Shown: positions 134 through 57,034, counted from the stretch's first letter. The stretch is DNA of 64,000 nt from Haliotis rubra (GCF_003918875.1 NW_025764899.1:62001-126000), one strand, 5' to 3'. Notes: generated by a model from the letters alone, not told the origin. Translations and numbers: made by a program.

Positions 134-3100
134 CCAACTTTGACAGATGTTCTGCATCCGTGTGCATGATGTCCACGAACTGGGCGTCCGTCTTGTCCAG
201 TCTAATGTCGCAGTTATCCTTGTCAAACGAGGGGCCTGCCGGATCCATGCCTGGGAACATAGACTCTTTCTGTGACCAATCTCGCACGCTAAACTTATAC
301 TTTCTGGAATCAAGGATACCAATAGTGCGCAGTCAAACAAACTAACAGGGAACGCTGCCGTTGAGTGTAGTCCAGAACCTATGGTACCTTCGTATGCGTT
401 TCCAGGTCAGTGGGCAAGAATTTAGCCTAAGCTTTTGGAACCCCCCCTTGTTCAGCCTTGATTTGGAACTAGCTGAGGGTGTTGTCGGTGTGACCTTTCC
501 GTACTTACATTCAGTGTTAAATTGGCCCCTTCCACAAATAAGTTCAGTCTGCAAGAACAGTTCTTGCGTTTCCAAATTAAATGATGCCCCGAAAGTATAT
601 TAACAATTCATTTGGCTGTCATTATATCAAAGGCAATTGGTTTCGCACGAATGAAATGTCGGCACTATGAAGCGATGCTACTTCCTGTACACATTGAATC
701 ACGGTCACGTTTGAGGTGTACCTGTGATTCACACTTGAGGTGTACCTGTAATTCACATTTGAGGAGTACCTGTAATTCACATTTGAGGTGTAACTGTAAT
801 TCACACTTGAGGTGTACCTGTAATTCAAATTTGAGGAGTACCTGTAATTCACATTTGAGGTTCACCTGTAATTCACATTTGAGGTGTACCTTTAATTCAC
901 ATTTGAGGTGTACCTGTAACTCACGTTTGAGGTGTACCTGTAATTCACATTTGAGGTGTACCTGTAATTCACATTTGAGGTGTACCTGTAATTCACATTT
1001 GAGGTGTACCTGTTATTCACATTTGAGGTGTACCTGTAATTCACGCCTGAGGAGTACCTGTAATTCACATTTGAGGTGTACCTGTAATCTACATTTGAGG
1101 TGTACCTGTAATTCACATTGAGGAGTACCTGTAATTCACATTTGACGTGTACCTGTAATTCGCCCAAGCTGTCCACCCAGCAGCTGACCCACTTGTCCGC
1201 TGATGTGAGCGCCGAGGCTGTGGCCGATGATGTGGATGTCACCGTATGATGTGCCGATTTCGTTCAACGCCTTTATGAACAGTGACAGCATGGATGCCAC
1301 GAGTCTTGTGTTGGAGGCAGCTTGGTCGTATATCTTGGGGGATGCGCCTTCTTGCCAGTTTACACGGAACACATTGAAATCACCCTGTACAGATAAAAAC
1401 ATTAATAGCTAAGATAATTATGTTGAAGCCGACGACATACATACATATTGTAATGTTCAAGCTCGTCATGTGTTTATCTTGTGCCAATGTATAAATTGAC
1501 GACGTGGGTCAATATTTTAATGGTCAAGATGTTGACATTCAGCACTATACCACAGAATGCCCGAACTGATGAGCCGAATGTGATTACAAGTAAATAGTGC
1601 AAGAATATCATTCAGGTGACAAAGCAATAAAGCAATAATATACTTTAGGTGACAAGGAGAGAAATGCAAGAATATTATTTAGGTGACAAGGAGAGAAATG
1701 CAAGAATATTATTTAGGTGACAAGGAGAGAAATGCAAGAATATTACTTAGGTGATAAGGAGAGAAATGCAAGAATATTATTTAGGTGACAAGGAGAGAAA
1801 TGCAAGAATATAATTTAGGTGACAAGGAGAGAAATGCAAGAATATTATTTAGGTGACAAGGAGAGAAATGCAAGAATATTATTTAGGTGACAAGGAGAGA
1901 AATGCAAGAATATTACGTAGGTGATAAGGAGAGAAATGCAAGAATATTATTTAGGTGACAAGGAGAGAAATGCAAGAATATTATTTAGGTGACAAGGAGA
2001 GAAATGCAAGAATATTATTTAGGTGACAAGGAGAGAAATGCAAGAATATTATTTAGATGACAATGAAATAGTGCAAGAATATCACATACGTGACATGGCC
2101 ATAATGCAAGAAACTCATTTAGATGATAAGGAGATAATGGAAGAGTATCACTTCGTTAACAAAACAGTATGTAATAATATCAGGTAAATGACAAAGAGAT
2201 AACACATGAATACCATTTTGGTGACAAGGGGATAATGCAAGAATATTATTTTCGTGACAAGGGGATAATGCAAGAATACCATTTAGATAACAAGGAAATA
2301 AAGCAAGAATATTATGCTGGTGACAAGGGGAAAATGCAAGAATATTATGTTGGTGACGAGGAGATAATGCAAGAATACCATTTTGGTGACAAGGAGATAA
2401 TGCAAGAATATTATGCTGGTGACGAGGGGAAAATGCAAGAATACCATTTTGGTGACAAGGAGATAATACAAGAATACCATTTAGGTGACAGGGAAAAAAT
2501 GCAAGAATATTACGCTGGTGACGAGGAGATAATGCAAGAATACCACTTAGGTGACAAGAAGATAACGGGAAAATGCCATGTATGTACAAGGAGATAATGC
2601 GAAAACAACATTTAGGTGACAAGAAGATAAGGGTAGAATACCAGTCAGGTAAGGAGATAATCAGATTATGATGAAGGAGCAACCATACACTCCGAAACGT
2701 CGTGTTATTCACAATACAGAAGTTGACGTCCATAATCTTGCTTTTCTTATGCATTCCACTTCTAAATGGCCTTCAAGGATTTGAAGGGATGTTACATTCA
2801 GTACAGGAACATAATGGAAGAATGCCATCTACGTGATATGGAAACAATGCTATAATATTAAGGACAGGTGGACTCTCACTATTTCAAGCAATGTGCGCTC
2901 TATGTTAGCCACCCATTCCGAGAGACAGTCGTCAGTGTAGCCGTGAATGATGAAGTAGGTGCGTTTCCCGGCGGTGTAGTGACTGTTGGAGATGCTGAAT
3001 ATGTTGCCTGCGTTGTCGGTGTTGGTGTCGATGTTGATCCACTGAGGGTAGTACCTGTTGTTCCGGGTGTAGAGGGCAAGCTGTAGTCCCTGCTCATCGG

Positions 3101-14573: not shown

Positions 14574-14980
14574 GTCTGCAACATAACAAAAATATTATAC
14601 ATGTACGTCAATTCTTACAGACAGCAACTTGACACATAAACATACAAATGACACGGTGTGTTAGATTACTTTATTTGGTTTTCCTTGGGAATGGGAACAA
14701 AGTAATCACGGACTGCTTGTTTGTCTGTTTGCCCTCTGTGTAATAGAAACTACTATGTACTACTACTTGTCATGTCTGTGTTATATGTCTTATATTCAGT
14801 CTACCGGCCCCGTCACCAAAATGTATAAAATCATTGTGATCTTCATATGCCTTTGTCTTACGGCTTGAAAAGCCATAAAGTTTGTTCTGCCCATGCCTGT
14901 ACGCGCTTAATCATACTTGACTGAGTTGGTTCGATGACGCTTTGAGTCGTCCGGTTGTACACGAGCGATGTAAGGAAATA

Positions 14981-15844: not shown

Positions 15845-16174
15845 TAGTTGACAGCAGGGACACTGACTACGATAACCTACTACAAGTCATGTCAGAGTTC
15901 GATCCGCTCGAGTCGACTCCTGCGACAAGCATGAATAACTAATGACCCAAGAATCCCGTCTGAGTTCGAACCCTCAGACCCTAGTAATGTACCATTGCGT
16001 ACGTATGGACGCAAAATGGGGTGGCCAGATAGCAAAGTATACCCAAACATAGCTTGTCCTTACATAGATTCGCGAACACTTTATCTTTACACTTGAATGA
16101 ACGTCTCTGCGAACAACACAATGTAGCTGATATGTCATGGATATGCACCCTATCATACCACACTGACAACCTAA

Positions 16175-16333
16175 ACTGACTGAGTTTAGTTTTACGCCGC
16201 TTTTAGCAATATTCCAGCAATATCACGGCGGGGGACACCAGAAATGGGCTTAACACATTGTGCCCATGTGGGGAATCGAACCCGGGCCTTTGGCATGACG
16301 AGCCAACGCTTTAACCACTAGGCTACCCCACCA
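16175..16333 (-). mobile_element. tRNA-derived SINE (family A), near full length
   Basis: A/B boxes, family tail, and flanking duplication accacactgacaa.ctaaa. Confidence 0.9.
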
Positions 16334-17480: not shown

Positions 17481-17615
17481 NNNNNNNNNNNNNNNNNNNN
17501 NNNNNNNNNNNNNNNNNNNNNNNNNNNNNNNNNNNNNNNNNNNNNNNNNNNNNNNNNNNNNNNNNNNNNNNNNNNNNNNNNNNNNNNNNNNNNNNNNNNN
17601 NNNNNNNNNNNNNNN
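17481..17615. other. Assembly gap (N run)
   Basis: Run of n characters. Confidence 1.
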
Positions 17616-21800: not shown

Positions 21801-24800
21801 TCTCCAGTAAGGCTGTATACTGAGTCTCCGGCGAGGCTGTTTACTGAGTCTCAAGGGAGGCTGTATACTGAGTCTCCAGTGAGGCTGTATACTGAGTCTC
21901 CAGTAAGGCTGTATACTGAGTCTCCGGCGAGGCTGTTTACTGAGTCTCAAGGGAGGCTGTATACTGAGTCTCCAGCGAGGCTGTATACTGAGTCTCCAGT
22001 AAAGCTGTATACTGAGTCTCCAGTAAGGCTGTTTACTGAGTCTCCAGTGAGGCTGTATACTGAGTCTCCAGCGAGGCTGTATACTGAGTCTCCAGTAAAG
22101 CTGTATACTGAGTCTCCAGTGAGGCTGTATACTGAGTCTCCAGTAAAGCTGTATACTGAGTCTCCAGTGAGGCTGTTTACTGAGTCTCCAGTAAAGCTGT
22201 ATACTGAGTCTCCAGTAAGGCTGTTTACTGAGTCTCCAGGAGGCTGTTTACTGAGTCTCCAGTAAAGCTGTATACTGAGTCTCCAGTGAGGCTGTTTACT
22301 GAGTCTCCAGTAAAGCTGTATACTGAGTCTCCAGTAAGGCTGTTTACTGAGTCTCCAGTGAGGCTGTTTACTGAGTCTCCAGTAAAGCTGTATACTGAGT
22401 CTCCAGCGAGGCTGTTTACTGAGTCTCCAGTAAGGCTGTATACTGAGTCTCCAGCGAGGCTGTTTACTGAGTCTCCAGTAAGGCTGTATACTGAGTCTCC
22501 AGCGAGGCTGTATACTGAGTCTCCAGCGAGGCTGTTTACTGAGTCTCCAGTAAGGCTGTATACTGAGTCTCCAGTGAGGCTGTATACTGAGTCTCCAGTA
22601 CAGCTGTATACTGAGTCTCCAGTGAGGCTGTATACTGAGTCTCCAGTAAAGCTGTATACTGAGTCTCCAGTAAGGCTGTATACTGAGTCTCCAGTAAAGC
22701 TGTATACTGAGTCTCCAGTAAAGCTGTTTACTGAGTCTCCAGTAAAGCTGTATACTGAGTCTCCAGTAAGGCTGTATACTGAGTCTCCAGTAAAGCTGTA
22801 TACTGAGTCTCCAGTAAGGCTGTTTACTGAGTCTCCAGTAAAGCTGTATACTGAGTCTCCAGTAAAGCGGCATAGTAATTTGCCTTAGGCCGTTTAGTTA
22901 TCCCGCTTGGGCTGTATAACTAATTTGCTGTCAAGATGTAGTTATTTGCCCAAGGGCTGTGTAATGAATCACTTTTATGACTACCCAGATATTCACTGTA
23001 TACAAAAACCTTTAACATCTTCTCCAGACCGCGGGGTTTGGAGGAACAAGTCCTGGAATCAAGATCGGCGTCTGTTTTCCTAGCACTTGCTCAGAAGCTG
23101 ATGTCACTGCCCTTCTCAATGCAGGTAGGAATGTCAACTTCGTTCTCTCTCAGATCACGTAAACCTGTCTTGTTGAGATGCTTGTAAGGCTGTATAGTGA
23201 GCTACCTGCAAGTTTTTTTTCATGTTTAGTGAGTCGTCTTTAGGACTGTGTAGTGATTGGCCTTTAAGGGCGATATGGTGAGTCGCCTGTACAATACCAT
23301 GGCGTTCTGTCCCCAGTGCTGGATAGAGTCAATACCAGCCTCAAGCTGAGAGCCTTCAGTGTTGTATAGTAATTCACTGTAAAACTGTACATATTGTGAG
23401 TCGCTTGTAATTCTGTATGGCGAGTTGTCTGTACAATATCATGGTGATCTGTCCCCAGTGCTGGAGACAGCCAATACCAGCCTCAGGGTGGGATCCACCG
23501 TCTGCCAGAAGAAGACACAAGACTACAACGCCAACGCCATCATTGTACTGTGAGTACGCTGAATCCTGACTTAATGTTATGTTACGGTGCATATTCCAAC
23601 CATATATATATATGTAATCTAGCTTCGTACACCAATGGTTGACAGCACAGGGTGAAATCCCAGACATCTGGACGTGACACCATCAGTGGGCTGCAGAATC
23701 TCCTGTAGCGTAAACAGGAAATACGTCATATCGGGAATCTCCCAGTTTGGTTTCTGTTTTGTATACCGGAAGTAACACATACCCTCGTAAAGCTCGTCAC
23801 AATCATTTCCCTACAGGTTGGTCCTGTCACTGTTTGTGACGGTGATGGTAACGGCCACGATGTACGACATCGTGTGGGTGCAGATGCCGAAATGGGAGAT
23901 GGAGAAACAACAAGCAGCAGGAGATGTGGGGACCACGGTCAACATCAAGGACACATCGCAGTCCATAGAGACGACACCTCTGTTGAAGGACAAACAGCGT
24001 CGCAGCAACTGTCTCGGACAACAGGTAGGCCCAGAGAAGATGAAATCTTTGCTTCGTGTGTGTGCGTTCACTGTTCACCTATTACAGCTGTCGATAATGT
24101 TTGCGAATGTTATGTTTTATTCAGTTGTATTGCATTAAGGTAAAGGATGAAGATTGTACTCAGTCATAGTATATCTTAGGAATGTAACGCTTACAGAATT
24201 ACATGTTAATGCTACGGTGATAATGAACGCCATAATGTTACGGTAATATTATTACATCATACTGTTATGGTCATCATAATGCAAAAGAATGTTACGGTTA
24301 AAGAATCAAGTTATAATGTCACGGTGATAATATTACTTATAAATGTCTGTTGCGGTGGGGTAGCCTAGTGGGGAAAGCATTCGCTCGACCCGCCAAAGCT
24401 GGTTTCTCAATATCCGTCGAAAATGTGAAACTCATTTTTGGTGTGCCCACCGTCATACTATTTAAATTGATATTACTGATATTGCTAAAAGCTGCTAAAA
24501 ACGGTGATTGTGTTGTAGGTGTTGCCGCTCAGATGTTGCTGTCCTTCTCTGTGTACACCAACACCGTCAAACTGTTGTCCCTGTCCCAGCCCCCGGGATC
24601 CATCTCCAGCATCCACGGGATCAGGTTCTTCAGCATGACCTGGGTCATCCTCGGACACTCCTTGGCTTTCGCTACTGGAGCCTCACGTGCGTCCAACTCT
24701 TTTACTTTATAGTTGTTATGTTGATATCATTTGTTGTGCCCTCCTTTAACTTCTGTATCTGCTGGTCGGAGGTTCGAATCCCAGATCGAGCAAAACATGA

Positions 24801-24908
24801 TCCTTGGTTTGTCGGCTCAAGCTGGTGTCAAGGAAACATCGCTGAACATTGGCATCTCTGTATATGTGTGGCGTGACGTGTGTGTGTGTGTGTGTGTGTG
24901 TGCGTGTG

Positions 24909-24939
<31 letters not shown>

Positions 24940-27900
24940 ACATTGCGCCTTATATATCATATGTAACTTTTGTCTTCCTGTTTTAGAAAATGCGGCTTCC
25001 TACCTTCCAAGGGCTTTAAAGCACTGGTCGTTCCAAGCCATTGCCAACGCCACCGTGGCTGTAGACACTTTCTTCACTCTCAGGTAAGCCCTGCTTAGAT
25101 CAGATCTTAGATCAGAACGGGCTCACTCGGGGTTGTTAAGTTGGACAGCTATCTGCATATCCCACTTAAGTCACATCATTTCCCACTTAAGTCACATCAT
25201 ACCTCAGGAAGGTCACATGATATCCCACTTAAGTCACGTCATATGTCAGGTAAGTTACATCATATCTCAAGTAAGTCACATCATATCCCAGGTAAGTCAC
25301 ATCATATCCCAGGTAAGTCACATCATAACGCAGGTAAGTCACATCATATCCCAGGTAAGTCACATCATATGTCAACAAGTAAGACACTTCGAGCTCCAAA
25401 GCACCTTCCTCATTTCAGTTCCCACTGCACTTAACAACCGATAAAAACATAATTACATACTGTCAGTATATCTTCATATAGCTAATAAATACTGATAGAA
25501 ACAGAGAATAGACAAACATCGCTATGTAGCTCGAAATGTCCTCGGCGCGGTTCATAAACTTCCATAACCTGGAAAAACGCAGGCCTTGCCTTTCTAAGCA
25601 CGTGATTGTTACTGTATCTCATGGTGCGTGGCAATAAACGCTGCCACCTACTTGAGTATTACGATAGTTTGGAAGACTTTAAGAGGTAGAAGCTCCTTCA
25701 TCTATTTATCGTATAATAGGATATCCCACCCTTTCATATGAAGCCTGGTTAACGTAACGAGCGTGCGGTAAACCTATGGTATCATGACGCGTTGCTCTTT
25801 GACTGATGGCATGATACAACAGACGGTCCACCATTTCACAGGGTGAGTGAGACTGTATTGTTGAACACATCAAAAGGTATATTATGTTAGCTTTGCATCA
25901 AAAGGTCTTATCATGTCAGTCTTTAATAGTATAACAGTAATTGTTCCATGCTGTATTCTGGCAGCGGTCTTCTGGTAGCTTACCTGGTGCTGAAGGAGCT
26001 GTCCCGCAACAAGGGCAAAATCAACTGGTTCATGTTCTACTTCCACAGATTCTGGAGGTAAGCACTGTACTATACAACACGTGAACCAATACGATTTTAC
26101 ACAGCTTTAGAAATATTTCGGCAATAGCGCGGCAGTGGACTCCAGAAATGGGTTTATACATTGTACCAAGGTATGGAACCGAAGGCTTTTAATCCAAGTT
26201 ATTCCACCCCATAGACTGTTAGATTAGTGTTCAGGCAACATGTTGACCTATGTCCTTGGTGGCAGGCTGACCCCTGCGTATATGCTGGTCATCATGGTGT
26301 ACGTCCCACTGTTCAATCACTGGGGAGAAGGACCACTGTGGCCTCAGGCCGGCATTGAACCTACCAACTGCAAACAATGGTGGGGCAACCTCCTCTACAT
26401 CAACAATATCCTCGACATAGAGAATCTGGTAAGGATATCTCAGTGGGTGTTTACTGCTCATCTTAATAGAAATACTTGAACATCGATTTGAAAAATTAGT
26501 ATTTTCCATTTTGTAGTGGAATTGTACTTACATGCTTATTGCGTTGTTTGAACTGGCTTGAGCCGGCGTCTGGTGATGTTTCAGTGCATGAACTAGTACT
26601 GACGTGCGTCTGGTGATGTTTCAGTGCATGAACTAGTACTGACGTGCGTCTGGTGATGTTTCAGTACATGAACTAGTACTGACGTGCGTCTGGTGATGTT
26701 TCAGTGCATGAACTAGTACTGACGTGCGTCTGGTGATGTTTCAGTACATGAACTAGTACTGACGTGCGTCTGGTGATGTTTCAGTGCATGAACTAGTAAT
26801 GACGTGCGTCTGGTGATATTTCAGTGCATGAACTAGTACTGACGTGCGTCTGGTGATGTTTCAGTGCATGAACTAGTACTGACGTGCGTCTGGTAATATT
26901 TCAGCGCATGATCTAGTACTGACGTGCGTCTGGTGCTATTTCAGTGCACGAACTAGTACTGGCGTGCGTCTGCTGATATTTCAATGCATGAACTAGTACT
27001 GCCGTGCGTCTGGTGCTATTTCAGTGCATGAACTAGTACTGACGTGCGTCTGCTGATATTTCAGTGCATGAACTAGTACTGACGTGCGTCTGATGATATT
27101 TCAATGCATGAACTAGTACTGATGTGCGTCTGGTGATATTTCAGTGCATGAACTAGTACTGACGTGCGTCTGCTGATATTTCAATGCATGAACTAGTACT
27201 GACGTGCGTCTGGTGATAATTCAGTGCATGAACTAGTCCTGACCTGCGTCTGGTGATATTTCAGTGCATGAACTAGTACTGACGTGCGTCTGCTGATATT
27301 TCAGTGCATGAACTAGTACTGACGTGCGTCTGCTGATATTTCAATGCATGAACTAGTACTGACGTGCGTCTGCTGATATTTCAATGCATGAACTAGTACT
27401 GCCGTGCGTCTGGTGATATTTCAGTGCATGAACTAGTACTGACGTGCGTCTGCTGATATTTCAGTGCATGAACTAGTCCTGACCTGCGTCTGGTGATATT
27501 TCAGTGCATGAACTAGTACTGCCGTGCGTCTGGTGATATTTCAGTGCATGAACTAGTACTGACGTGCGTCTGCTCATATATCAGTGCATGAACTAGTACT
27601 GACGTGCGTCTGGTGCTATTTCAGTGCATGAACTAGTACTGACTGGCGTCTGCTGATGCAGATGTTTCAGTGCATTAACTGGTTACGACATACCGGGACT
27701 GCTCGTATTTATTTAGCCCGTGGGCTTATCAACAAAACACATAACGTTTTTAAGCCCATGGGCGTAAATACGATTATGAAAATGGAGTGATCTCCCTTAC
27801 CGGATGATTACTGAAACGTGTTTACATGGAAAGTTTCAATCAATATTGCACACTTAGTGCTACTAGGGGATTTCATATTTACAAAACACGTTAGACATCT

Positions 27901-33954: not shown

Positions 33955-36900
33955 CTACTCCTCCTTCACCTCCCCACAGTCTTCTATAGAAACTCTCTTA
34001 GCTGGAGTGCCATTTCGGGAACCACAAGCCTGAAGAAGTAATTGTGAAAAAATATCTACCGGGTAGTTTACTAAATCAGTCTAAAGGAGCATGTCTTGAA
34101 TCAGCAAGTGTTGGGGTCATTGCAGAGTTCAGAAATATTCCAGCTACATTAAATGTCAACAGGAAGCATCAAAATATTTTTCCATATGTTCTCTACCTGC
34201 TCAAACCCAGATTATTAGAATGGCAACAAAACATCCATCAGACAATGATATATCTCCTTGGATACCTTTTGCCAATGAGATATATTGAACAGTCTGGAGA
34301 TATATTCCTGGATACTGAGTCAACTGTGAAGTCAGTTGATCATACCAGTTTGACTTGAAAAAACAGAACACATTTACTCAGGAATCTCCAAGTGAAATGG
34401 TAGAACAAATTCAGTGTGTATTGATATCTAAACATTTTGTTATTACAAGCTTAGAACTGGTGAGACCGATCAAAATAGAATGTCTTACCTCCATCTTCTT
34501 GACAGTGTCCATGCCATCAGTGACCTGACCAAACACAACATGCTTCCCATCTAGCCTGCAACACAGTAACATGACCAGGGATTTATCTAAGTTGCAAAAA
34601 CAAGACCCCTTGCAAAACTTCATTTATTTTATTCAAAATTGCAAAAACATCCATTCAGAAATCTTTTAACATCTGCATTACAGTCCATAATATAAGTCTA
34701 AGCATTTGTGTTATAATTCCAATTTGGTAATTGTTACTGATATTTGCTGCAGAATTGTGGCTGAAGAACAAGCTCTAAGCAGACCTAGATAAATCCCTTA
34801 TAACACAATAAATGCATGATGCTAAATGTCTCAGTCTGTACTTAGGTCACATGACCTGCTGTGAGGGTGCGAAGTTTCGTTCAGCAGTAACCCAGGGTTA
34901 CCTAGCATGAGATTGATGAACAGGTATACAGTACATGGGATACTTTGTAAATGTTAATGAACATCTGCTCTGTTAATGAATACAAAATGCATATGACATA
35001 AAATTGGTGGTATCATACCATTCTGTTTTTTCTGTGCAAATAAAGAACTGAGAGCCATTTGTGTTCGGTCCAGCATTAGCCATGGAGAGAATCCCTGCAA
35101 CGAATCATGACCAGCTATTACACATGATTACAAATCATTTCAAGTGGACTTTCTGTTCTCCACTATTCATTACTATATGCCTCTGTAAACATTGCATGCA
35201 CATAATTCAGTATATTCTGAAATTGTTTGAAGAGGAGAGGGGAGTTTGTATTTAATTCTGCAACTGTATATTTGTCAGGAATGACTAACATACTTTAGCA
35301 GGGGGTTACCTTTGTGTGTAGACTATACATACACGACTTCAAGTGACTCTTGCTTATCAACATAGCTACTTATACATGAAGAATACCTTATGTTTACTTT
35401 GTGTAGATTTGGATGTTCCTGACCAAATCGTAAGGTCAGGAAAATTTTACCTCTGATCCAAAAATAAATAATGGATGAATCTTATGTAATGTAATCCAGC
35501 AGTTCTCTCTATTGCATCAGGTGGGATGCTACAAGGTTAATATTTGCATCCATTTTCAGGTCTTATGTCTGTAAGATGCAATATTTTGCATCCAGTGAAA
35601 CCCTGCTTACAAGACAACTAGTACTGGGTTCCCGTCTCACCTGGTCCAGTGTGCTTCAGGTCAAAGTTCTCGTCAGCAAACTTTTCCCCGTAGATAGACT
35701 TCCCACCAGTACCATTATGTCTGGTAAAGTCTCCTCCCTGGCACATCTGACACGCAGATAAGGATCAGACACAGAGGCACATCAGACACACAAATACGGG
35801 TCAGTGAGTGAGTGAGTGAGTTGGGCTTCACACATTATGCCCATGTGGAGAATCGAACCCGGGTCTTCGGCGTGACGAGCGAACAAATACGGGTCAGACA
35901 CAGACACACTCCAGGCAGACACAAGGATCAGTCATGTGCACATTACAAAGACAGGTGCACACACACAAATAAGGATCAGACACAGAGGCACATCAGACAC
36001 ACAAATAAGGATACAAGGGGCACAGGTGTACATCTAACACACAGATAAGGATCACAAAGACAGGTGTACAGCTAACACACAGATAAGGATCACAAAGACA
36101 GGTGTACAGCTAACACACAGATAGATAAAAGACAGATCAACAACAGGCAGACAGGTGTCTAACACACAGGTAAGGATCACAAAGGCAGGTGTACATCCTA
36201 CAAAAGGCTAAGGATCAAAGCAATACAGGGGAACATTCAAGACACAGAGGCACAACTAATAAACAAATAAGGATCTGGGGATCTGAAAACCTTGACAGTT
36301 GGCATGCTTTATGCAATTAAAATGAAAAAAAATCAGTTGACTACAAGTGCATGCAAATCTAAAAACATAAACAAAATCATGACATATCCATTGTATTAAA
36401 ACTCTGGCATGTATTCATCAGATGATAGCTTGGTGATGTGTGGGTTCCTCTACCATTTCCTTTTTTTGGGAACACAAACACAAATTCACACATCGTTACT
36501 TCCAGGTCCCCATCATAGTCCCTTGGGGTGTTGGAGTAGCCAAGATTGTGCTTGTCACAGCCAAGGCCGAGGTTAGACTCCCCATATGGTACGTTTGCTG
36601 AGTACTTCTGGTGTCCCCTGCCAATACATCCCTGCTAATATTGATGACAGCTGTGCAACATAGCTTTAGTCATCTCTTTTGTAAGGCCTTAGTGCAGGGA
36701 GTGAGTTTGGTTTTACGTCGCTTTTAGCAATATTCCAGCAATATCACACATTGTATCCATGTGTGGATTGGGCGAACCACTAGGTCTTCTGCCTCCTTAG
36801 TGACAAATGGATGCTTCAACCACTAGACTACCCATCCGCCTCCTTAGTGCAGTGAAGCCAAAACGGATCAGACCAGACAATCCAAAGAAAATAACTCAGT

Positions 36901-48900: not shown

Positions 48901-51900
48901 GTACGACATCTGCCCTCAACTCTATAGCAATACGCCCAACACTTCGATTGCCAATCTTGATGTCAAAGTAGACTTGGGGATTTGTACGGGATTTCTTGGG
49001 GGCTGACACTGCAGTCTAAGGAAGAATAGCTTCAATTAAAGTACTGTCGGAAATACAAAAAAAACTGTTTATAGGCTGTCACTCTGTATCCCTAAAATTG
49101 ACACAACTGCAAATAGCAAATGTCGAAATAACCCACTTCAGCCTAACTTGGCATTCAGTGGGATGCGTAATAGAATATCCAGAAAAAAAGCTTCAATTAA
49201 ATTACTGTCGGAAATAGAAAAAAACTGTTTTTAGGCTGTTACTCTGTATCCCTAAAATTGACACAACTGCAAAAAGAAAATGTCGAAATACTCCACTTCG
49301 GCCTAACTTGGCATTCAGTGGGATGCGTAATAGAATATCCAGAAAAGCATGTTTACTCGTAAAATCGGGCAAAACTTACGAATAGCTGCTGAAAACAATA
49401 GATCAGACCATAGATGGCAATTAGGTCACTCAGCCAGGTATGACGACGGACCGTCGACTCACCTGGCATGAAATGCATGTGCTGCCTACAGGCACAAGGG
49501 GTCATCTCAAAGATATTTTGTGCTTTTTCAGGTATGTTGACTATGCCTCATCTATTGATTAACATCTTACGTGTCTTTCTTGCATGAATTTTGTTGAGAT
49601 ATGTAAAAGAGTATGATACCTGATAACTATAGAGACGCATCGTATTGAAGGTATTAGGTGGCATGACCACCCGATCGGGAAGAACGAGAGGCCTAGGACT
49701 GGATATTATTTGTAAATTGTTATGACATGCCCTGTACTTCCCCAGTATAATTGCCCTAAAGGATTATCTTATCTTAGCTGATATCTCTATCCCCAAGCCC
49801 GATCCCAACGATCATCTGCAACACCCATCCAGGTTTTGCTTTTGAGACAAACCCTCCTATCTGTTTCTTTTTATAGTGACAGTGAGATTCCACGGTAGCT
49901 ACATCCTTAATAGTTTCAGCATGAAAGTTATTATTTTTCATGCCAGCTATCGTTTATAATGAAGCTACGTCTTATTTCAAACTGAGAATTTAAAAAGTGT
50001 CCTTTGTAATACAATATTGTCGCACACTAATTTGCATAAAGCCATGGTCTGTTCCAAATAATTCGCTTTGGACTTAGAAAAAACCCGCATTGCTCATTTC
50101 TGCACTAATCTCTCCTCAGTAAAGTCCTTTTTCTACGTTTCTTAGGTCCCTACCACTAGGGCTTCCACGGGTACTCGAGTACTTGAGGACGAGTCGGGTT
50201 TAGCTGGACTCGAGTCCATTTTCAAGGACTCGAGGACTCGAAAAGGGGAGATAACTCGGATTATTTGACGTTGACAGACTGTCTGCCATGTGCTGAGCAT
50301 GAGCGGCCATTAACATCTAATATTATGACAAAGATATAACTTTATTATCCCGGGGGGGAAATTCTCATACATCCAAACTGTCTCAAAATATATATATACA
50401 CAGTTCACAAAAATATACACAATAATTACATGCTCAAAACGAATGCTATTTATAAATAAAACTGACATGATATAATTCAATTAACCACATAGGTAAAGAG
50501 GATGAATAATTCTAGTTCTAATCACATGATGGTGATTCAAAATATTTGTTGCATTCACGAATACTTGATGGTATGAAAGACTGTCGAGCTCTGTTTTGAG
50601 GGAAGGTAATCGACAGCAGCGTCCAGAATGAAGTAGTTCAAAATGATGAGACCAAATATGTCAACTGTCAAATCTAATTTTAGCTGTCCTTTTTACTATA
50701 CTCAAAATACACTCCAGAAATTTTGCAAGCAGTATTAACAATTTTGAAAAGTCTGTTTTTGTTAAGATGAGACAGATCCCTATACCAACATAGAAAATTG
50801 TAGGTCAACACACTTTGAATAAAGGTTTGATAAAAAACTGTCATTACGGTTTTGTCAATACCTTGACGATAATAATGTTAGAATCAGAAATTAGGCAAGT
50901 AACAGTGGCATCATCTGAAAATTTCACAGTAAACAGTCATATATTGACAAGTAACAGGCATTGGTATACAAAACGAAGAGTACGGATGAAGGAACACAGC
51001 CTTGTGGATCTCCAGTAGAAGTTGAGAGAAAAGAAGATTGATAGCCGTTGACACTGACATACTGAGTTCTGTGTACCCTGAATTCTTTAACCCATCTGAT
51101 AATGTTTTTATTAACACCTAGATTAAATAGTTTCCTCCTCACACGGTGTGGCTGTATAGTATTAGTTGCTACAAGTCTGCAGATGAGAGTACATGTAAAA
51201 ATAATACATCGATTGAGATTTCACTTCTTAAAATGATTAGGTAACTATCTTGACAATTGATCGTTTTCTTGAAAGGTATGAATTTCGAGTACTCGGGTCC
51301 GAGTCGAGTCTCACCCCTCGAGTACTCGAGTCCAAAAAAATGGACTCGTTGAAGCCCTACCTACCACTGAGACTTGTAGTTAGGCCGAACTTAGTTTAAC
51401 AGATACTCCACACTTGCACATAAATCTACATAAATTGTAGAGAAAATACAGTTTTTTTCTATTTCCGACAGTACTTTAAAAACATGGTAGTATTTGAGGC
51501 TACGGCCTTTCAACTTCATCATGTAATGTGGGTGAAAGTCTGTCACACAGCAAATATTGTTGAGTGCAGCATCAAACAATTGACAGAAGTTTGACAGTGT
51601 TATCATATTATCAGAACTACGTTACTATGGTTACTTGAGCAGTTCATAGCACATACCTCTTCTGTGTCTTCTGCAGGTCTCTTTGTTCCATGCTCTCCTT
51701 CCCTTCCCCCATCCTCTTCCTCCCCTTCTCCTTCCTCCCCTTCTCCTTCCTTCTTCTCTAGCGTCTCCCCAGAGTGTTCCTGTAGCCATGTATCCTCCGC
51801 CCACACTGAAGGTCAAGCAAGGTCAGTGTTAGTAGAACATTACACACTGAAGGTCAAGCAAGGTCAGTGTTAGTAGCAAGTTTCACACTGGAGGTCAAGC

Positions 51901-54900
51901 AAGGTCAGAGTTAGAAGCACATTTCACACTGAAGGTCAAGCAAGGTCAGTGTTAGTAGCACATTTCACACTGAAGGTCAAGCAAGGTCAGTGTTAGTAGC
52001 ACATTACACACTGAAGGTCAAGCAAGGTCAGTGTTTAGTAGCACATTACAAACTGAAGGTCAAGCAAGGTCAGTGTTAGTAGCACATTTCACACTGAAGG
52101 TCAAACAAAGTCAGTGTTAGTAGCACATTACAAACTGAAGGTAAAGCAAGGTCAGTGTTAGTAGCACATTTCACACTGAAGGTCAAGCAAGGTCAGTGTT
52201 AGTAGCACATTTCACACTGAAAGTCAAACAAAGTCAGTGTTAGTAGCACATTACAAACTGAAGGTCAAGCAAAGTCAGTGTTAGTAGCACATTTCACACT
52301 GAAGGTCAAGCAAGGTCAGTGTTAGTAGCACATCTCACACTGAAGGTCAAACAAAGTCAGTGTTAGTAGCGCATTACACACTGAAGGTCAAGCAAGGTCA
52401 GTGTTAGTAGCACATTTCACACTGAAGGTCAAGCAAGGTCAGTGTTAGTAGCACATTACAAACTGAAGGTCAAGCAAGGTCAGTGTTAGTAGCATATTTC
52501 ACACTGAAGGTCAAACAAAGTCAGTTAGTAGCACATTACAAACTGAAGGTCAAGCAAGGTCAGTGTTAGTAGCAAATTTCACACTGAAGGTCAAGCAAGG
52601 TCAGTGTTATTAGCATATTTCACACTGAAGGTCAAACAAAGTCTGTGTTAGTAGCGCATTACAAACTGAAGGTCAAGCAAGGTCAGTGTTAGTAGCACAT
52701 TTCACACTGAAGGTCAAACAAAGTCAGTGTTAATAGCACATTACAAACTGAAGGTCAAGCAAGGTCAGTGTTAGTAGCACATTTCACACTGAAGGTCAAA
52801 CAAAGTCAGTGTTAGTAGCGCATTACAAACTGAAGGTCAAGCAAGGTCAGTGTTAGTAGCACATTTCACACTGAAGGTCAAACAAGGTCAGTGTTAGTAG
52901 CACATTTCACACTGGAGGTCAAACAAAGTCAGTGTTAGTTGCGCATTACAAACTGAAGGTCAAGCAAGGTCAGTGTTAGTAGCACATTTCACACTGAAGG
53001 TCAAGCAAGGTCAGTGTTAGTAGCACATTACAAACTGAAGGTCAAGCAAGGTCAGTGTTAGTAGCACATCTCACACTGAAGGTCAAACAAAGTCAGTGTT
53101 AGTAGCGCATTACAAACTGAAGGTGGAACAGCGTAGTAACTGTGACAGTGAAGGTGAGATTCAGCACAAGAAACATACAACACAAGGAGTGTCAGACTCA
53201 CTGGTACACAAGGAGTGTCAGACTCACTGGTACACAAGGAGTGTCAGACTCACTGGTACACAAGGAGTGTCAGACTCACTGGTACACAATGATTGTCAGA
53301 ATCAGCAGTAGCCACATAAGAGGAATTGAAGGCCAAAAGATAATATCCTAACAATATTGTGCAAGTATACTATCTGACTGACTGAGTTTAGTTTTACGCC
53401 GCTTTTAGCAATATTCCAGCAATATCACAGCGGGGGACACCAGAAATGGGCTTGACACATTGTGCCCATGTGGAGAATCGAACCCGGGTCTTCGGCGGGA
53501 CGAGCCAACGCTTTAACCACTAGGCTACCCCACCGCCCCGCAATTATACTATCACTATAATGACAAACTAAATAAAATCACCATTGACATAAGCAGGAAC
53601 TTCAACGGAATAGTTCAACTCAACCGGGAATCAGTAGTGCATGTTCATTGTTTCTAATCATGTGACGTATCCTGCTACAGATTCACCAGTCTCCACTGGT
53701 TACTATCTAAAACCAGGTATTCCGTTAACACAATCAGTTAGAATCTGGGTGTGAACCAGTGACTCCAGGTTTCAAGCATCCCTAAGGCAATGTAAATTGA
53801 AAGGGTAAGTTTGCTGGGAACATTTGTCATCTGTCACTTGTGAACAGCTAATGCTGGTATATGCAGCCTGTAAACAATCAAGTCCGGGCCAAAGAATAAC
53901 AAAAGGAAGCAACTGTGCAAATTGCGTGGTGAGACAGCCAAGCATGACCTGAAATATTTTGATAAAGTTGAGAAACAATCCATGAACATCTGGCACGATG
54001 CCAATTTGCCCCTCCCTACCATTATGCTGACAGAGTTCGACTACTTCCTGGTCCTGTTACATCCTCCTGATGACCTACCTGGTCTACCTGACCCTCCTTG
54101 ATCTTCATTGGCTTGGCCAGGTTCACTCGGATTGTCCGCCCAAACAACTCTGAGTCATTCTGAACACAAGACAATTATCACTGGCCAGTAATAAAAACAA
54201 CAACACAAATTTCATAACAAAACAAGTGAAACAAACAAATATTGTCATTTGTTTACATAAACAATGTAATAGTTGGGGGGCAGTGGGGTAGCCCTGTGGT
54301 TAAAGCATTCGCTTGTCATGATGAAGACCCAGGTTTGATTCCCCACATGGGTACAATGTGGGAAGTCCATTTCTAGTGTCCCGGCCGTGATATTGCTGGA
54401 ATAATGCTAAAAGCAGCATAAAGCCACACTCACTCACTGTATTAGTTGGGAAAAATCTGTTTTCTCTATACACTTATTACTTGTTGCTTAATAAGAATCT
54501 TAATTGTATCAGATTGTGGCTGTTACAGAGTACATATGACACTTGTTCTTGATGTCAAGGACACAACCGTACCACCTAACATGGTGTTATGGACACAACC
54601 GTACCACTATATCATGGTGTTATGGACACAACCGTACCACCTAACATGGTGTTACGGACACAACCGTACCACCTATCATGGTGTTATGGACACAACCGTA
54701 CCACCATATCATAGTGTTATGGACACAACCGTACCACCATATCATAGTGTTATGGACACAACCGGACCACCTAACATGGTGTTATGGACACAACCGTACC
54801 ACCATATCATGGTGTTATGGACACAACCGTACCACCTAACATGGTGTTATGGATACAACCGTACCACCATATCATAGTATTATGGACACAACCGTACCAC

Positions 54901-57034
54901 CATATCATGGCGTTATGGACACAACCGTATCACCATATCACGGTGTTATATGGTCACAACCGTACCACCATATCATGGTTTTATGGACACAACCGTACCA
55001 CCATATCATGGTGTTATATGGACACAACCGTACCACCATATCATGGTGTTATGGATACAACCGTACCACCATGTCATAGTATTATGGACACAACCGTACC
55101 ACCATATCATGGTGTTATATGGACACAACCGTACCACCATATCATGGTCTTATGGACACAACCGTACCACCTAACATGGTGTTACGGACACAACCGTACC
55201 ACCTATCATGGTGTTATGGATACAACCGTACCACCTAACATGGTGTTATATGGACACAACTGTACCATCTAACGCGCAGTCATTTGTACTACCATACAAT
55301 AAGGTATGCTACCTACCATGTTGTCTATGGCTGCAGCAGAATCCTAAAAAGAGAGACAAATTACTATATACAATAAAGACTTATCAATGGTAAGCACAGT
55401 CATAATATACCTGTGTAATGTGACAAGTATCTGAACAGCAACTTAGGATAGACAAGTAAGTGATACTTATCTGCTTATTATCAAAAGGACTTCCATTTCA
55501 TCATCAAACTTTCAAAGGGTATTGAATATGACAAACACTAAAAATTACATCATGAAATAGTGAGTCAGAAGAGATGAGTCTTAAAACCTCTTGCACCTAA
55601 TAAGTGACAATATATCTTTTCAAATGCAGGGATTGGAAAAGGCAGGGGCCATTGGCCATTTTGCACATTAGAATAAAAAATGGCCCATTAAAATTTTGAA
55701 GTTTACTATTGATAAAAGGGCAGTGGCCGATTCTAAATTCTGAAAATGGCCCATTGTCAAGGTTCTCTATGCCAATCCCTGCAAATGTAACCAACTCTTG
55801 TTTATCATGTTTACTGGTATATATACTTGTACTACCTTGGGTTTGTGTGTGATGTCACAACCATAACTACTCATACTGTGGTGCAAAGTAACATAATTCA
55901 TAATCTAGTTGCACAAATTACATGCAGAATAATGGTTGCTTGTCCGTCCAAAATCTTTATCTTTTTAAGAGTTAAGTTACAAATTTGAGGCAATGTAAAA
56001 CAGTCAAACATAACTTGATGAGATAATGCTTCAAAATCATACTTATTTTAATGTACTGAACTGATATTTCAACTTGTCTAATGATTCACCATGGAAATAA
56101 CGGAGATAAAACATACCTCAGCAAGTTCAAACTCCACAAAAGCAAAGCCTCTGTGTTTTTCTGGAAAGAATACAGTGAAGTTATTAATTCAAATTGTGTG
56201 AGTGAATATTACTGGATGATACTTCAACACCATGGTTATTTCCTTGATTATGACTTGGACTCGTCATGCTCAAATATACCTCTTATCTACGAATCCAGGA
56301 ACTTTTTTGACTATTTTGGCTATTCATTTTTTACTCTCTCAAAATGCTATGTTATATGCTGTTTTTGTGTAGTTCAATAAAATAATAAACATTTATTTTA
56401 TATAATGTTGTATTATTTATGTTGGGCAAAATATCGTAACGCCAAACATATTACTATTATGGGCAAAGGTCCTCCCCTGTAAAAATTGATTCAACATGTT
56501 CTATGACCAAACTGTAGATTTGTCCAGCTTGAAGGTGATGGTGAGTCACAATCCTGTAAGGCGTGGTCTAGTTCATACCTGTTTCATAGTCCAGGGGTAT
56601 CTGGATATCAACTATGTCGCCAAATGGCAGGAAGGCTGCATGGAGGACTTTCTCATCAACCTCCTCCGCAAGACCACCTAATACAAAAACATGATCAATA
56701 AATAACCACCAAAACACATTACAAAGCACACTATCAACAAAACAAGTAGTTGCCTTTAGCTACAGGTTAATTTGTTAATCATTGAGACTGATAAAACAAT
56801 ACACGTTTTCAAAAATAGAGAAACTTCATCATAGTTCATGTTCAAACCTTATTTTAAAGAAACATTCGTTCTGAACGAAATTTGACCTGTATTCAGTGTT
56901 ATCCATGTGACACGTCACCGTCAAACATGTTAATATTTCAATTAATGTAATAAACCGTTTAATTAGAGATGTGTATGCGAGAAATAACGATTCTTATTAC
57001 CGACGTAGACGATACGCTTGTTACTGGTAGCCAT
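45953..57034 (-). CDS. PPIE: Peptidyl-prolyl cis-trans isomerase E (cyclophilin E / Cyp33): RRM + cyclophilin
   Basis: Exons 57034-57001 ([11 protein letters not shown]), 56677-56579 ([22 protein letters not shown]), 56160-56117 ([15 protein letters not shown]), 55343-55317, 54159-54079 ([17 protein letters not shown]), 51805-51657, 49015-48889 ([11 protein letters not shown]), 48490-48411, 48041-47936, 47385-47310, 46544-46478 and 46021-45953 (..VIANCGEFV*). One apparent 1-nt deletion near 54092. Confidence 0.96.
46720..47068 (+). mobile_element. SINE family C, full length, in a PPIE intron
   Basis: Head ccgtggtgtagtggttagagcg..ggttcgatcccc; tail (CCTCA)n. Confidence 0.9.
48042..48410 (-). 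other. U12-type GT-AG intron in PPIE
   Basis: 5'SS |GTATCCTA; consensus U12 branch TTCCTTAAC 9 nt from the end (..TTCCTTAACCTGCTGTAG|). Confidence 0.9.
49040..51475. mobile_element. Kolobok-like non-autonomous DNA transposon (TTAA target) hosting nested elements
   Basis: ttaa|AGTACTGTCGGAAATA..AAAAAACTG and CAGTTTTTTTCTATTTCCGACAGTACT|ttaa. The left ~160 bp is tandemly duplicated. Confidence 0.72.
50157..51359. mobile_element. hAT-type non-autonomous element with a nested LINE RT fragment
   Basis: TIR tagggcttc / gaagcccta with exact 8-bp TSD cctaccac. Inside (minus, about 50340-51170) is an RT remnant [32 protein letters not shown] (Rex1/CR1-group-like). Confidence 0.85.
51802..53125. repeat. 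41-bp minisatellite (about 32 copies) made of the PPIE exon 6 branch point plus acceptor
   Basis: Minus unit GTGCTACTAACACTGACCTTGCTTGACCTTCAG|TGTGAAAT; the last copy is the true acceptor at 51806/51805. Confidence 0.96.
53180..53300. repeat. 26-bp tandem repeat (about 4.5 copies)
   Basis: Unit cacaaggagtgtcagactcactggta. Confidence 0.9.
53374..53540 (-). mobile_element. tRNA-derived SINE (family A), full length
   Basis: Complete head-to-tail copy with flanking gcaa(g/t)tatactatc duplication. Confidence 0.92.
54276..54438 (+). mobile_element. tRNA-derived SINE (family A), diverged
   Basis: A/B boxes and family tail. Confidence 0.85.
54559..55272. repeat. ~30-35-bp minisatellite in PPIE intron 4
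   Basis: Unit ggacacaaccgtaccac(cat)atcatggtgttat. Confidence 0.95.

What the first reader, a model, noticed from the sequence alone, without database searches (positions are those of the whole stretch)
703..55343. Recurrent 'splice-site echo' arrays: intronic minisatellites built from the adjacent exon/intron junction in four different genes
Seen: at least six unrelated tandem repeats have a unit that contains the neighbouring splice junction. These are the lipase exon 3 donor (24 bp), nrf-6 exon 4 acceptor (duplicate), nrf-6 exon 10 acceptor (40 bp), cyclophilin paralogue U12 branch+acceptor (~39 bp), PPIE exon 6 branch+acceptor (41 bp) and PPIE exon 4 donor (~33 bp). Each array extends only into the intron. 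In the units I translated (lipase, nrf-6, PPIE) the decoys either lead quickly to a stop codon or have the GT mutated. Inference: either a mutational process seeds or expands repeats preferentially at splice junctions, or duplications spanning a junction are tolerated only in this polarity. Copy number could act as a tunable poison-splicing/NMD dial, or as raw material for intron sliding and gain. I cannot tell from sequence alone whether this is already described for this lineage.
Basis: partly seen in the sequence, partly recalled or inferred. Interest (0 to 1): 0.82.

Follow-up and report, generated by a model that had tools for sequence, protein, structure and literature searches.

The report
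Splice-junction ("mirage") minisatellites in abalone introns
Four introns in this abalone window really are filled with tandem copies of their own exon/intron junction. This kind of repeat ("mirage" minisatellite) is already known, the RNA on hand shows only the real junction being spliced, and it has not been shown that junctions are hit more often than chance.

Summary
The observation mostly holds.

- **Arrays confirmed.** A blind scan of 68 annotated junctions with 24-nt probes found echo arrays at four of them: lipase exon 3 donor (24 bp, 18 decoys), nrf-6 exon 10 acceptor (40 bp), the U12-type acceptor of the cyclophilin paralogue's exon 4 (38 bp) and PPIE exon 6 acceptor (41 bp, 32 decoys).
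- **Other claims.** The nrf-6 exon 4 acceptor carries one 82-nt duplicate. The PPIE exon 4 donor claim is weak (p about 0.03). Six other arrays in annotated introns show no likeness to a junction.
- **Origin.** The four units occur only at this locus and on its haplotig. Copy numbers differ up to four-fold between the two haplotypes, and non-junction arrays vary just as much.
- **Splicing.** All decoys run into stop codons. RNA contigs from two runs join PPIE exons 2 to 6 canonically with no array sequence.
- **Prior knowledge.** These are "mirage" minisatellites, described in amphioxus and in human F7. This scan has already reported at least eight such cases on other DNA of this genome.
- **Chance.** Four of 11 intronic arrays span a junction where 0.7-0.9 are expected (p 0.004-0.01), but the window was picked for this trait. 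In an independently chosen 200 kb, at least 3 of 28 arrays do so where 0.9-1.6 are expected, which is not significant.

A mutational bias towards junctions is unproven. A poison-splicing dial has no support.

The parts
705..1161 (-). 24-bp minisatellite (19 copies here, 11 on the haplotig). Its first unit is the end of lipase exon 3 (9 nt) plus the donor GT at 1152-1151.
   Evidence: 18 echo hits, none elsewhere; z 24
1153..1384 (-). Lipase exon 3 (GHSLGAH...GRITG). It covers Pfam Lipase profile positions 100-177, and the next exon continues at 177.
23274..23354 (+). Single decoy copy of the nrf-6 exon 4 acceptor region. It covers about 42 nt of intron and 40 nt of exon at about 83% identity, and its AG is intact.
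23459..23549 (+). nrf-6 exon 4 (the authentic acceptor AG is at 23457-23458).
26566..27657 (+). 40-bp minisatellite in nrf-6 intron 9 (27 copies here, 68 on the haplotig). The unit holds TTTCAG|TGCATG, an echo of the exon 10 acceptor.
   Evidence: (15 echo hits)
28118..28305 (+). Degenerate units of the same 40-bp repeat, running up to the authentic acceptor of nrf-6 exon 10.
   Evidence: window 28120-28208 matches the array, E 1e-17
28306..28385 (+). nrf-6 exon 10 (CMGWSWYLSNDMQF...).
35747..36280 (-). 38-bp repeat region (TRF core 35961-36135; 4.7 copies here, 19 on the haplotig). It is built from the U12-type branch site plus acceptor of the cyclophilin paralogue's exon 4, and a SINE fragment interrupts it at about 35800-35890.
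   Evidence: 6 echo hits; z 7.4
35641..35746 (-). Cyclophilin paralogue exon 4 (MCQGGDF...). The intron upstream has the donor GTATCCTTAT and a TCCTTAT branch site.
51802..53124 (-). 41-bp minisatellite (32 copies). Each unit carries TACTAAC, a pyrimidine tract and CAG, and the last unit is the authentic acceptor of PPIE exon 6.
   Evidence: 31 echo hits; z 18.9
51657..51805 (-). PPIE exon 6. RNA contigs join it to exon 5 at the last acceptor copy.
54559..55267 (-). 33-bp minisatellite in PPIE intron 4. Its descent from the exon 4 donor is doubtful, and no unit keeps GT.
   Evidence: (z 2.8)
55317..55343 (-). PPIE exon 4, a 27-nt micro-exon. RNA contigs show exactly 71 nt (exon 3 plus exon 4) between exons 2 and 5.

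Best explanation
These are "mirage" minisatellites. A short tandem duplication of 24-41 bp, arising in place, happened to span an exon/intron junction. It was then amplified by the usual minisatellite processes (replication slippage, unequal exchange); this step is inferred.

The mRNA is unchanged because the spliceosome uses the exon-proximal copy: the first donor or the last acceptor. This is shown for the two PPIE junctions and inferred for the others. Splice-site choice by position is the likely reason, as in the 5'-to-3' scanning shown for the human F7 donor repeat. For acceptors, pairing with the downstream exon is a further inference.

Any use of a decoy meets a stop codon, so such transcripts would probably be removed by NMD (inferred). 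The arrays therefore behave as neutral, fast-changing VNTRs. Older ones drift away from the junction through insertions and point mutations (nrf-6, the cyclophilin paralogue, perhaps PPIE exon 4).
For: - **Blind scan.** Of 68 junctions, only these gave multiple echo hits in their own intron and none or one elsewhere. Array-to-junction alignment gave z 24, 18.9 and 7.4 for three arrays. It gave 4.0 for nrf-6, where one unrelated junction scores as high.
- **Local origin.** The four units occur nowhere in the 1.38-Gb assembly except this locus and its haplotig.
- **Instability.** Copy numbers differ between haplotypes (19 v 11, 27 v 68, 4.7 v 19) while the junction copy is identical. Arrays unrelated to junctions vary just as much.
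- **Splicing.** RNA contigs of two runs (X11, X12) join PPIE exons 2-3-4-5-6 with the exact exon lengths. RNA depth is zero across both arrays in all three RNA runs laid.
- **Lipase continuity.** The Pfam Lipase profile runs 100-177 in exon 3 and resumes at 177 in the next exon.
- **Decoys intact but harmless.** Lipase keeps GT in 17 of 18 and PPIE exon 6 keeps AG in 32 of 33, with scores equal to the authentic site. All intact decoys tested meet stops, at codon 6, 2-30 and mostly 4 for the lipase, PPIE exon 6 and nrf-6 arrays.
- **Literature.** The same anatomy and normal splicing are reported for amphioxus Adh3, globin, TnC and PGBD5 (PMC3087553, PMC3902484) and for human F7 IVS7 (PMC1557585).
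- **Junction older than array.** In the cyclophilin paralogue, PPIE has an intron at the same position (F|MCQGGDF) without an array.
Against: - RNA evidence covers only PPIE. It consists of assembled contigs, which drop rare isoforms and cannot see transcripts degraded by NMD.
- Four junction-spanning arrays among 11 is more than uniform seeding predicts (0.7-0.9), so pure chance plus tolerance may not be the whole story.
- For PPIE exon 6 only 4 exon bases lie in the unit, so the direction of descent (junction to array) rests on the unit being locus-specific rather than on exon sequence.
- The nrf-6 unit also resembles the donor end of the same intron (z 4.4). I cannot explain that.
Confidence: 0.75

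Rival explanations
1. A mutational process seeds or expands tandem duplications preferentially at exon/intron junctions. Candidates are polymerase pausing or R-loops at splice sites, or repair that aborts where conserved exon meets diverged intron in a highly heterozygous genome. On this reading the arrays are still neutral, but their position is not random.
For: - In this window 4 of 11 intronic arrays span a junction where 0.73-0.94 are expected (p 0.004-0.01).
- In the independent 200 kb, at least 3 of 28 arrays do so where 0.9-1.6 are expected.
- An earlier follow-up on a RyR gene of this genome reported about four-fold (I did not check it).
- The amphioxus authors call the mechanism of generation unclear (PMC3087553).
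Against: - The window, and the RyR window, were flagged because of the trait, so their p-values are inflated.
- The only sample chosen without regard to arrays is not significant. An automated junction classifier found 2 positive arrays where about 3 were expected from random seeds.
- The null is probably too low, because later SINE/TE insertions make today's introns longer than they were when the seed arose.
- Junction arrays occur in the sampled Ig/fn3, Fz and lipase genes, which I presume are not germline-expressed. That argues against a germline transcription-coupled cause.
Confidence: 0.2
2. The arrays are a regulatory device. Decoy sites capture a copy-number-dependent share of transcripts into stop-containing isoforms, so array length tunes expression (a poison-splicing or NMD dial).
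For: - All intact decoys tested lead to premature stops, and in the lipase and PPIE exon 6 arrays they score as well as the authentic sites.
- Copy number is polymorphic.
- RNA contigs cannot see isoforms that NMD degrades.
Against: - There is no array sequence in RNA contigs of three runs, and contigs of two of them join PPIE exons 2-6 only canonically.
- Arrays with no junction content vary in copy number just as much, as expected for neutral VNTRs.
- A stop within a 24-41-nt unit is roughly what random sequence gives.
- Amphioxus mirages leave splicing regular (PMC3087553).
Confidence: 0.05
3. The arrays came first, from a mobile element or as unrelated intronic satellites, and the splice site later moved onto the array's edge unit (intron sliding or exaptation).
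For: - The PPIE exon 6 unit shares only 4 exon bases with the exon.
- Several other arrays here carry splice-like motifs without any link to a junction, for example 21-bp units holding a perfect CAG|GTAAGT.
Against: - The units are locus-specific and not dispersed.
- The lipase unit holds 9 exon bases, the nrf-6 unit at least the first 6, and the nrf-6 exon 4 duplicate about 40.
- The cyclophilin intron position is shared with PPIE, so it is older than the array.
Confidence: 0.04
4. Assembly artefact or chance resemblance.
For: - Long-read assemblies can mis-size repeats.
- The window's PPIE exon 5 has a 1-nt error or variant.
- The PPIE exon 4 donor claim is within chance.
Against: - The arrays are present on two separately assembled haplotype contigs.
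- Array-like sequence is present in DNA contigs of another organism label, and those contigs end at the array borders.
- Echo hits are far beyond chance for four arrays.
Confidence: 0.02

Closest known systems
"Mirage" minisatellites of amphioxus (Adh3: Canestro et al. 2002, cited through PMC3087553 and PMC3902484; globin BflGb6/BflGb9, TnC, PGBD5)
   Same: Both are tandem repeats whose unit spans an exon/intron boundary, at donors and at acceptors. The units are tens of bp long, many copies keep AG/GT, length differs between haplotypes, and mRNA splicing is regular.
   Different: The host here is a gastropod mollusc, not a cephalochordate. The arrays are much longer (up to 32-68 copies, against 3-6 in the globins). 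One array copies a U12-type branch site and acceptor. Somatic instability was not tested here.
Human F7 intron 7 37-bp VNTR (PMC1557585)
   Same: The first repeat element spans the exon/intron boundary. The authentic donor is followed by identical pseudo-donors that stay silent. This matches the lipase array.
   Different: In F7 the choice of the most upstream site was shown by 50 mutant constructs; here it is inferred. Three of the four arrays here are acceptor repeats, for which no comparable experiment was found.
Ordinary intronic minisatellites of abalone (e.g. the 27-bp VNTR in TSSK1-like intron 3, PMC6905558)
   Same: Same genus, same size range, and polymorphic copy number. Six further arrays in annotated introns of this window are of this plain kind.
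   Different: In the text passages read, the published example is not described as containing a splice junction (its figure was not seen).
Recursive-splicing ratchet sites
   Same: Some units (the 21-bp array 25156-25370) carry a juxtaposed pyrimidine-CAG|GTAAGT, the ratchet consensus.
   Different: To my knowledge (not checked here), ratchet sites serve very long introns and are single conserved sites. The intron here is 881 nt, the motif is in a polymorphic array (10 v 3 copies), and there is no RNA evidence of use.

Membership tests
Mirage minisatellite | Tandem repeat of minisatellite size (unit roughly 10-160 bp) | tested here: met
   TRF gives periods of 24, 40, 38 and 41 bp with 4.7-32 copies.
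Mirage minisatellite | The repeat unit spans an exon/intron boundary (exon bases plus the splice signal) | tested here: met
   Lipase has 9 exon nt plus GT. PPIE exon 6 has branch site, tract, AG and 4 exon nt. nrf-6 exon 10 has AG plus TGCATG. The cyclophilin unit has branch site plus AG. For PPIE exon 4 the result is inconclusive.
Mirage minisatellite | The terminal, exon-proximal unit is the authentic junction | tested here: met
   This is direct for lipase and PPIE exon 6. For nrf-6 and the cyclophilin paralogue, degenerate units reach the junction but later insertions separate the array core from it.
Mirage minisatellite | Regular splicing is not disturbed | tested here: met
   This is met for PPIE only: RNA contigs X11 and X12 join exons 2-6 with exact lengths. 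For lipase it is indirect, through Pfam profile continuity. For nrf-6 and the cyclophilin paralogue there is no RNA test.
Mirage minisatellite | Length instability or polymorphism | tested here: met
   Window against haplotig: 19 v 11, 27 v 68 and 4.7 v 19 copies. The PPIE arrays are 32 v 32 and 21.5 v 22.5, on near-identical haplotypes. Somatic instability was not tested.
F7-type silent pseudo-donor VNTR | Pseudo-sites are identical in sequence to the authentic donor and sit downstream of it | tested here: met
   In lipase, 17 of 18 decoys keep GT. Their median score equals the authentic site's, at 0.8.
F7-type silent pseudo-donor VNTR | Only the most upstream site is selected, shown by mutating it | not testable with these tools
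   This needs minigene constructs.
Recursive-splice ratchet array | Sites lie in a very long intron and are used stepwise, with RNA intermediates | tested here: not met
   The introns are 0.9-2.3 kb, and no RNA contig touches the PPIE arrays. The arrays of the other genes have no RNA test.
Mobile-element-borne satellite | The same unit is present at many loci | tested here: not met
   Each of the four units matches only C9 and its haplotig C2629. The tool scores only the best candidates.

The most novel reading that the evidence does not exclude
Exon/intron junctions in this highly heterozygous genome are real hot spots for the birth of minisatellites, a several-fold bias not explained by intron age or selection. 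That would point to a repair or replication error tied to the exon/intron transition. The long acceptor arrays (32 identical branch-site plus AG units of which only the last is seen spliced) would then be a widespread natural test bed for 3' splice-site choice.
Probability: 0.15. Interest if true: 0.6.

Novelty: new member of a known kind. Interest (0 to 1): 0.3.

Why it matters
- **Splice-site choice.** The arrays are natural experiments. Up to 32 sequence-identical acceptors, or 17 intact donors with scores like the authentic site's, sit beside the authentic site, and in PPIE only the exon-proximal copy is seen in RNA. The donor case has an experimental model (F7). I found no comparable experiment for acceptor repeats or for the U12-type one.
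- **Practical use.** Such arrays mislead gene predictors and repeat-aware assemblers, and they are ready-made VNTR markers in a farmed species.
- **Open question.** If the modest excess at junctions proves real genome-wide, it would bear on how introns grow, slide or arise. On present evidence this is an ordinary, tolerated by-product that the scan has met many times in this genome.

Tried and rejected
- **More genome sequence.** I tried to fetch 600 kb of kinase-gene stretches for a classifier-based test of arrays against random seeds.
- **Automated junction classifier.** It combined a coding-potential model with splice scores. It missed the lipase donor and one true mirage in the control sample, so it serves only as a rough check.
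- **Cyclophilin exon 5 donor echo.** The hit at 34720 has 7 mismatches and no GT. I rejected it as chance.
- **21-bp array (25156-25370) against the nrf-6 exon 7 donor.** Its likeness is no better than to unrelated donors, so descent cannot be shown.
- **24-bp array (20925-22863) against the nrf-6 exon 2 donor.** The same result and the same conclusion.
- **Satellite carried by a mobile element.** Rejected.
- **ORFs of 70 aa or more as an exon proxy in the control regions.** Too noisy.
- **Original mirage paper.** Canestro et al. 2002 is not held in the library, so it is cited only through two papers that describe it.
- **** was an empty script.


Full report
**What the window is.**
The window is G000:C9:62001-126000 of a 1.38-Gb assembly. 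Earlier notes of this scan call it blacklip abalone; I did not check that name.

It holds these genes:
- a pancreatic-type lipase on the minus strand (exons 3205-2880, 1384-1153, 250-about 133);
- an unassigned 613-aa ORF;
- an nrf-6-like gene on the plus strand (15 exons, 18848-32528, 738 aa with no stop);
- a short cyclophilin paralogue on the minus strand (7 exons, 39552-33955);
- PPIE on the minus strand (12 exons, 57034-45953);
- the start of an SMC6-like gene.

I built the models by hand from open frames, GT-AG sites and frame continuity. Pfam supports Lipase, NRF and RRM_1 on the exon ORFs tested; cyclophilin exons were not scanned.

The assembly gap (17481-17615) is intergenic. It lies 1.2 kb from the nearest exon used here, and its two sides are colinear on one haplotig contig. 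Nothing below depends on it, and I did not read its letters elsewhere.

TRF lists about a dozen distinct arrays. I took a 24-nt probe across every one of 68 annotated junctions. I counted same-strand matches with at most 7 mismatches inside the junction's own intron and everywhere else.

Only four junctions have multiple echoes:

| Junction | Echoes in own intron | Echoes elsewhere |
|---|---|---|
| lipase exon 3 donor | 18 | 0 |
| nrf-6 exon 10 acceptor | 15 | 1 |
| cyclophilin exon 4 acceptor | 6 | 0 |
| PPIE exon 6 acceptor | 31 | 0 |

The nrf-6 exon 4 acceptor has one echo, an 82-nt copy at about 83% identity covering 42 nt of intron and 40 nt of exon. A single hit for the cyclophilin exon 5 donor is chance.

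I then aligned each array consensus to its own junctions and used 66 unrelated junctions as the null. That gave z 24 for lipase, 18.9 for PPIE exon 6, 7.4 for cyclophilin and 4.0 for nrf-6. For nrf-6, the degenerate units beside the exon are more telling than the consensus.

The PPIE exon 4 donor against the 33-bp array reaches only z 2.8, and one unrelated junction scores as high. The array begins 35-45 nt into the intron and no unit has GT. That claim stays doubtful.

The 34-bp, two 24-bp, 21-bp, 26-bp and 160-bp arrays in annotated introns show no specific likeness to a junction.

**Anatomy.**
- **Lipase.** The exon ends ...CGAATTACAG|GTACAC, and the unit is GAATTACAG|GTACACCTCAAATGT. Nine exon bases are therefore repeated.
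- **PPIE exon 6.** Each 41-bp unit holds TACTAAC, a pyrimidine-rich stretch and CAG|TGTG. The last unit is the working acceptor.
- **nrf-6.** The unit holds TTTCAG|TGCATGAAC, against the authentic TTCCAG|TGCATGGGT. The homogeneous core lies 650 nt upstream. Degenerate units at 28118-28208 match the core at E 1e-17, and an unrelated stretch of about 430 bp lies between.
- **Cyclophilin paralogue.** Its intron 3 is U12-like, with donor GTATCCTTAT and TCCTTAT sitting 13 nt before the AG. PPIE has a U12-like intron at the same protein position, with GTATCCTAG and TTCCTTAAC. That junction is therefore older than the array.

**Origin.**
Four-unit probes from each of the four arrays match only C9 and contig C2629 in the whole assembly. 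C2629 (about 27.8-93.9 kb, minus strand) is an uncollapsed second haplotype of the entire window at 88-99% identity. The repeats are thus home-grown and were not brought in by a mobile element.

**Instability.**
Copy numbers in the window against the haplotig:

| Array | Window | Haplotig |
|---|---|---|
| lipase 24 bp | 19 | 11 |
| nrf-6 40 bp | 27 | 68 |
| cyclophilin 38 bp | 4.7 | 19 |
| PPIE 41 bp | 32 | 32 |
| PPIE 33 bp | 21.5 | 22.5 |

The two haplotypes are 99.5% identical across the PPIE arrays, which explains the near-equal counts there. Arrays unrelated to junctions vary as much (37 v 15, 22 v 38, 10 v 3). The 25-mers on the exon side of every junction, and the first 40 intron bases, are identical or nearly so on both haplotypes.

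**Are the decoys used?**
- In lipase, 17 of 18 decoys keep GT, with the same score as the authentic site. Reading on from the exon meets TGA at codon 6.
- In PPIE exon 6, 32 of 33 keep AG with equal scores. Stops come at codon 2 (18 units) or by codon 30.
- In nrf-6, 22 decoys have weaker scores. Twenty of them meet a stop at codon 4; the other two at codons 6 and 40.

RNA was available for PPIE only. I laid three runs that behave as RNA and one DNA run of another organism label on 51400-57100.

- Contig X12-8 (390 nt) places 71 nt between exon 2 and exon 5. That is exactly exon 3 (44) plus exon 4 (27), so no 33-bp unit is included.
- The same contig places 15 nt between AAGGAGG of exon 5 and TGTGGG of exon 6.
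- Contig X11-1 gives the same arithmetic (150 nt).
- The 15 nt are the rest of exon 5 (GATCAGGTAGACCAG), as it reads on the haplotig.
- No 41-bp unit is included, and RNA depth is zero across both arrays.

Contigs cannot exclude rare or NMD-degraded isoforms. For lipase, Pfam profile coordinates run 100-177 in exon 3 and resume at 177 in the next exon. That fits use of the first donor.

The DNA run of organism B covers both arrays at 92% identity or better, and its contigs end at the array borders. Together with the second haplotype, this argues against an assembly artefact.

**Is it more than chance?**
*Model A.* Each of the 11 arrays in annotated introns arose from a seed placed uniformly in the non-array, non-insertion part of its own intron or across one of its junctions. 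The expected number spanning a junction is 0.94. Four are observed, giving P(4 or more) = 0.0098.

*Model B.* With all introns pooled, 0.73 are expected and P = 0.0044.

*Caveats.*
1. This window was flagged because of the trait, one among hundreds read in this genome, so these p-values are too small.
2. Introns have since gained SINE and other insertions, so they were shorter when the seeds arose and the true null is higher.

*Independent sample.* I took 200 kb around fn3-domain hits. The stretches are C2756:1.10-1.17 Mb (a titin-like gene), C2606:200-300 kb and C1112:1.70-1.73 Mb. Of 28 arrays, at least three are true junction arrays:
- C2756:1164413-1164529, holding 25 nt of an I-set exon plus GTAAGT;
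- C2606:286914-287180, holding 26 nt of an Fz-domain exon plus GTAGGT;
- C2606:293456-294085 and degenerate units before it, holding about 32 nt of an fn3 exon plus GTAAGC.

These rest. Two more are doubtful. My rough expectation is 0.9-1.6, which is not significant.

An automated classifier found 2 positive arrays where about 3 were expected from random seeds, but it is insensitive.

The data fit an excess of one- to five-fold. A junction-directed process is possible but not needed.

**On "polarity".**
A tandem copy of a donor junction reads exon-tail, intron-head, exon-tail, intron-head and so on. If the first donor is used, everything after it is intron by definition. The same holds in mirror image for acceptors. 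"Extends only into the intron" therefore restates which copy is spliced. It is not a second observation in need of its own cause.

**What is known.**
- Repeats spanning exon/intron boundaries were named "mirages" in amphioxus Adh3. They are also reported in amphioxus globin, TnC and PGBD5 genes. Splicing there is regular, length differs between haplotypes, the generating mechanism is called "unclear", and a model for intron gain has been proposed (PMC3087553, PMC3902484).
- The human F7 intron 7 VNTR is the donor-type counterpart. Fifty constructs showed that identical pseudo-donors are functional but never compete with the most upstream site (PMC1557585).
- Polymorphic intronic minisatellites are reported in abalone (PMC6905558). 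I found no report of junction-spanning ones in molluscs.
- This scan has already followed up at least eight such cases elsewhere in this genome and reached the same reading. Those notes gave me the name; the tests above are my own.

**Verdict.**
This is a real, well-marked example of a known and apparently tolerated kind of repeat. It is new for the lineage in print, and it includes a U12-type acceptor version. A regulatory role has no support, and a positional bias is unproven.

Noticed in passing
window 54091-54092 (PPIE exon 5, minus strand): The window reads AAGGAGGGTCAGG. The haplotig, the RNA contigs and the DNA of organism B read AAGGAGGGATCAGG. The window copy therefore lacks one base and shifts the PPIE frame. 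With the extra base, exon 5 ends ...EGSGRP at the good donor CCAG|GTAGGT (54079). This is either an assembly indel error or a broken allele.
   Followed up: yes
window 1-64000 against G000:C2629:27773-93887 (minus strand): The whole window is present twice in the assembly, as an uncollapsed second haplotype at 88-99% identity. Several large indels and all VNTRs differ.
   Followed up: partly
window 48411/48041 (PPIE intron 8) and 37288/35746 (paralogue intron 3): Both cyclophilin genes keep a U12-type GT-AG intron at the same codon (F|MCQGGDF). The donors are GTATCCTAG and GTATCCTTAT, and the branch sites are TTCCTTAAC and TCCTTAT.
   Followed up: partly
window 25156-25370: A 21-bp array has units carrying a perfect pyrimidine-CAG|GTAAGT. 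It lies 72 nt downstream of the weaker authentic donor of nrf-6 exon 7, with 10 copies here and 3 on the haplotig. Descent from that donor cannot be told apart from likeness to the general consensus.
   Followed up: partly
window 26429-26455 against the 40-bp unit (26566-27657): The nrf-6 40-bp unit also resembles the donor end of the same intron (TCTGGTAAGGATATCTCAGTG against TCTGGTGATATTTCAGTG, z 4.4). One unit thus carries likenesses to both ends of intron 9. This is unexplained and may be chance (one unrelated junction scores as high).
   Followed up: no
L017:4413-4529 (C2756:1164413-1164529): A junction-spanning donor array outside the window, in the titin-like gene. The unit holds 25 nt of an I-set exon plus GTAAGT.
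   Followed up: partly
L026:6914-7180 (C2606:286914-287180): A junction-spanning donor array outside the window. The unit holds 26 nt of an Fz-domain exon plus GTAGGT.
   Followed up: partly
L027:3456-4085 (C2606:293456-294085): A junction-spanning donor array outside the window. The unit holds about 32 nt of an fn3 exon plus GTAAGC, and degenerate units precede the TRF core.
   Followed up: partly
window 53374-53540, 54273-54440, 35800-35890, 16190-16320 and others: Copies of a tRNA-derived SINE. Summed contig depth there is 10^4-10^5 in the RNA runs and up to 4x10^7 in the DNA run, so the element is extremely abundant in the genome and also present in transcripts.
   Followed up: no
window 12756-14594 (minus strand): A 613-aa open frame with no Pfam match. 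It is proline/serine-rich and carries an in-frame 36-bp repeat at 13578-13671.
   Followed up: no
window 5957-6613 and 42121-42600 (minus strand): By eye these look like remnants of Tc1/mariner-type transposases, lying in intergenic or intronic DNA. I ran no family scan on them.
   Followed up: no
window 54079-54097 (minus strand): The PPIE exon 5 end carries two donor-like motifs 9 nt apart (CAG|GTAGAC, CAG|GTAGGT). RNA uses the second.
   Followed up: yes
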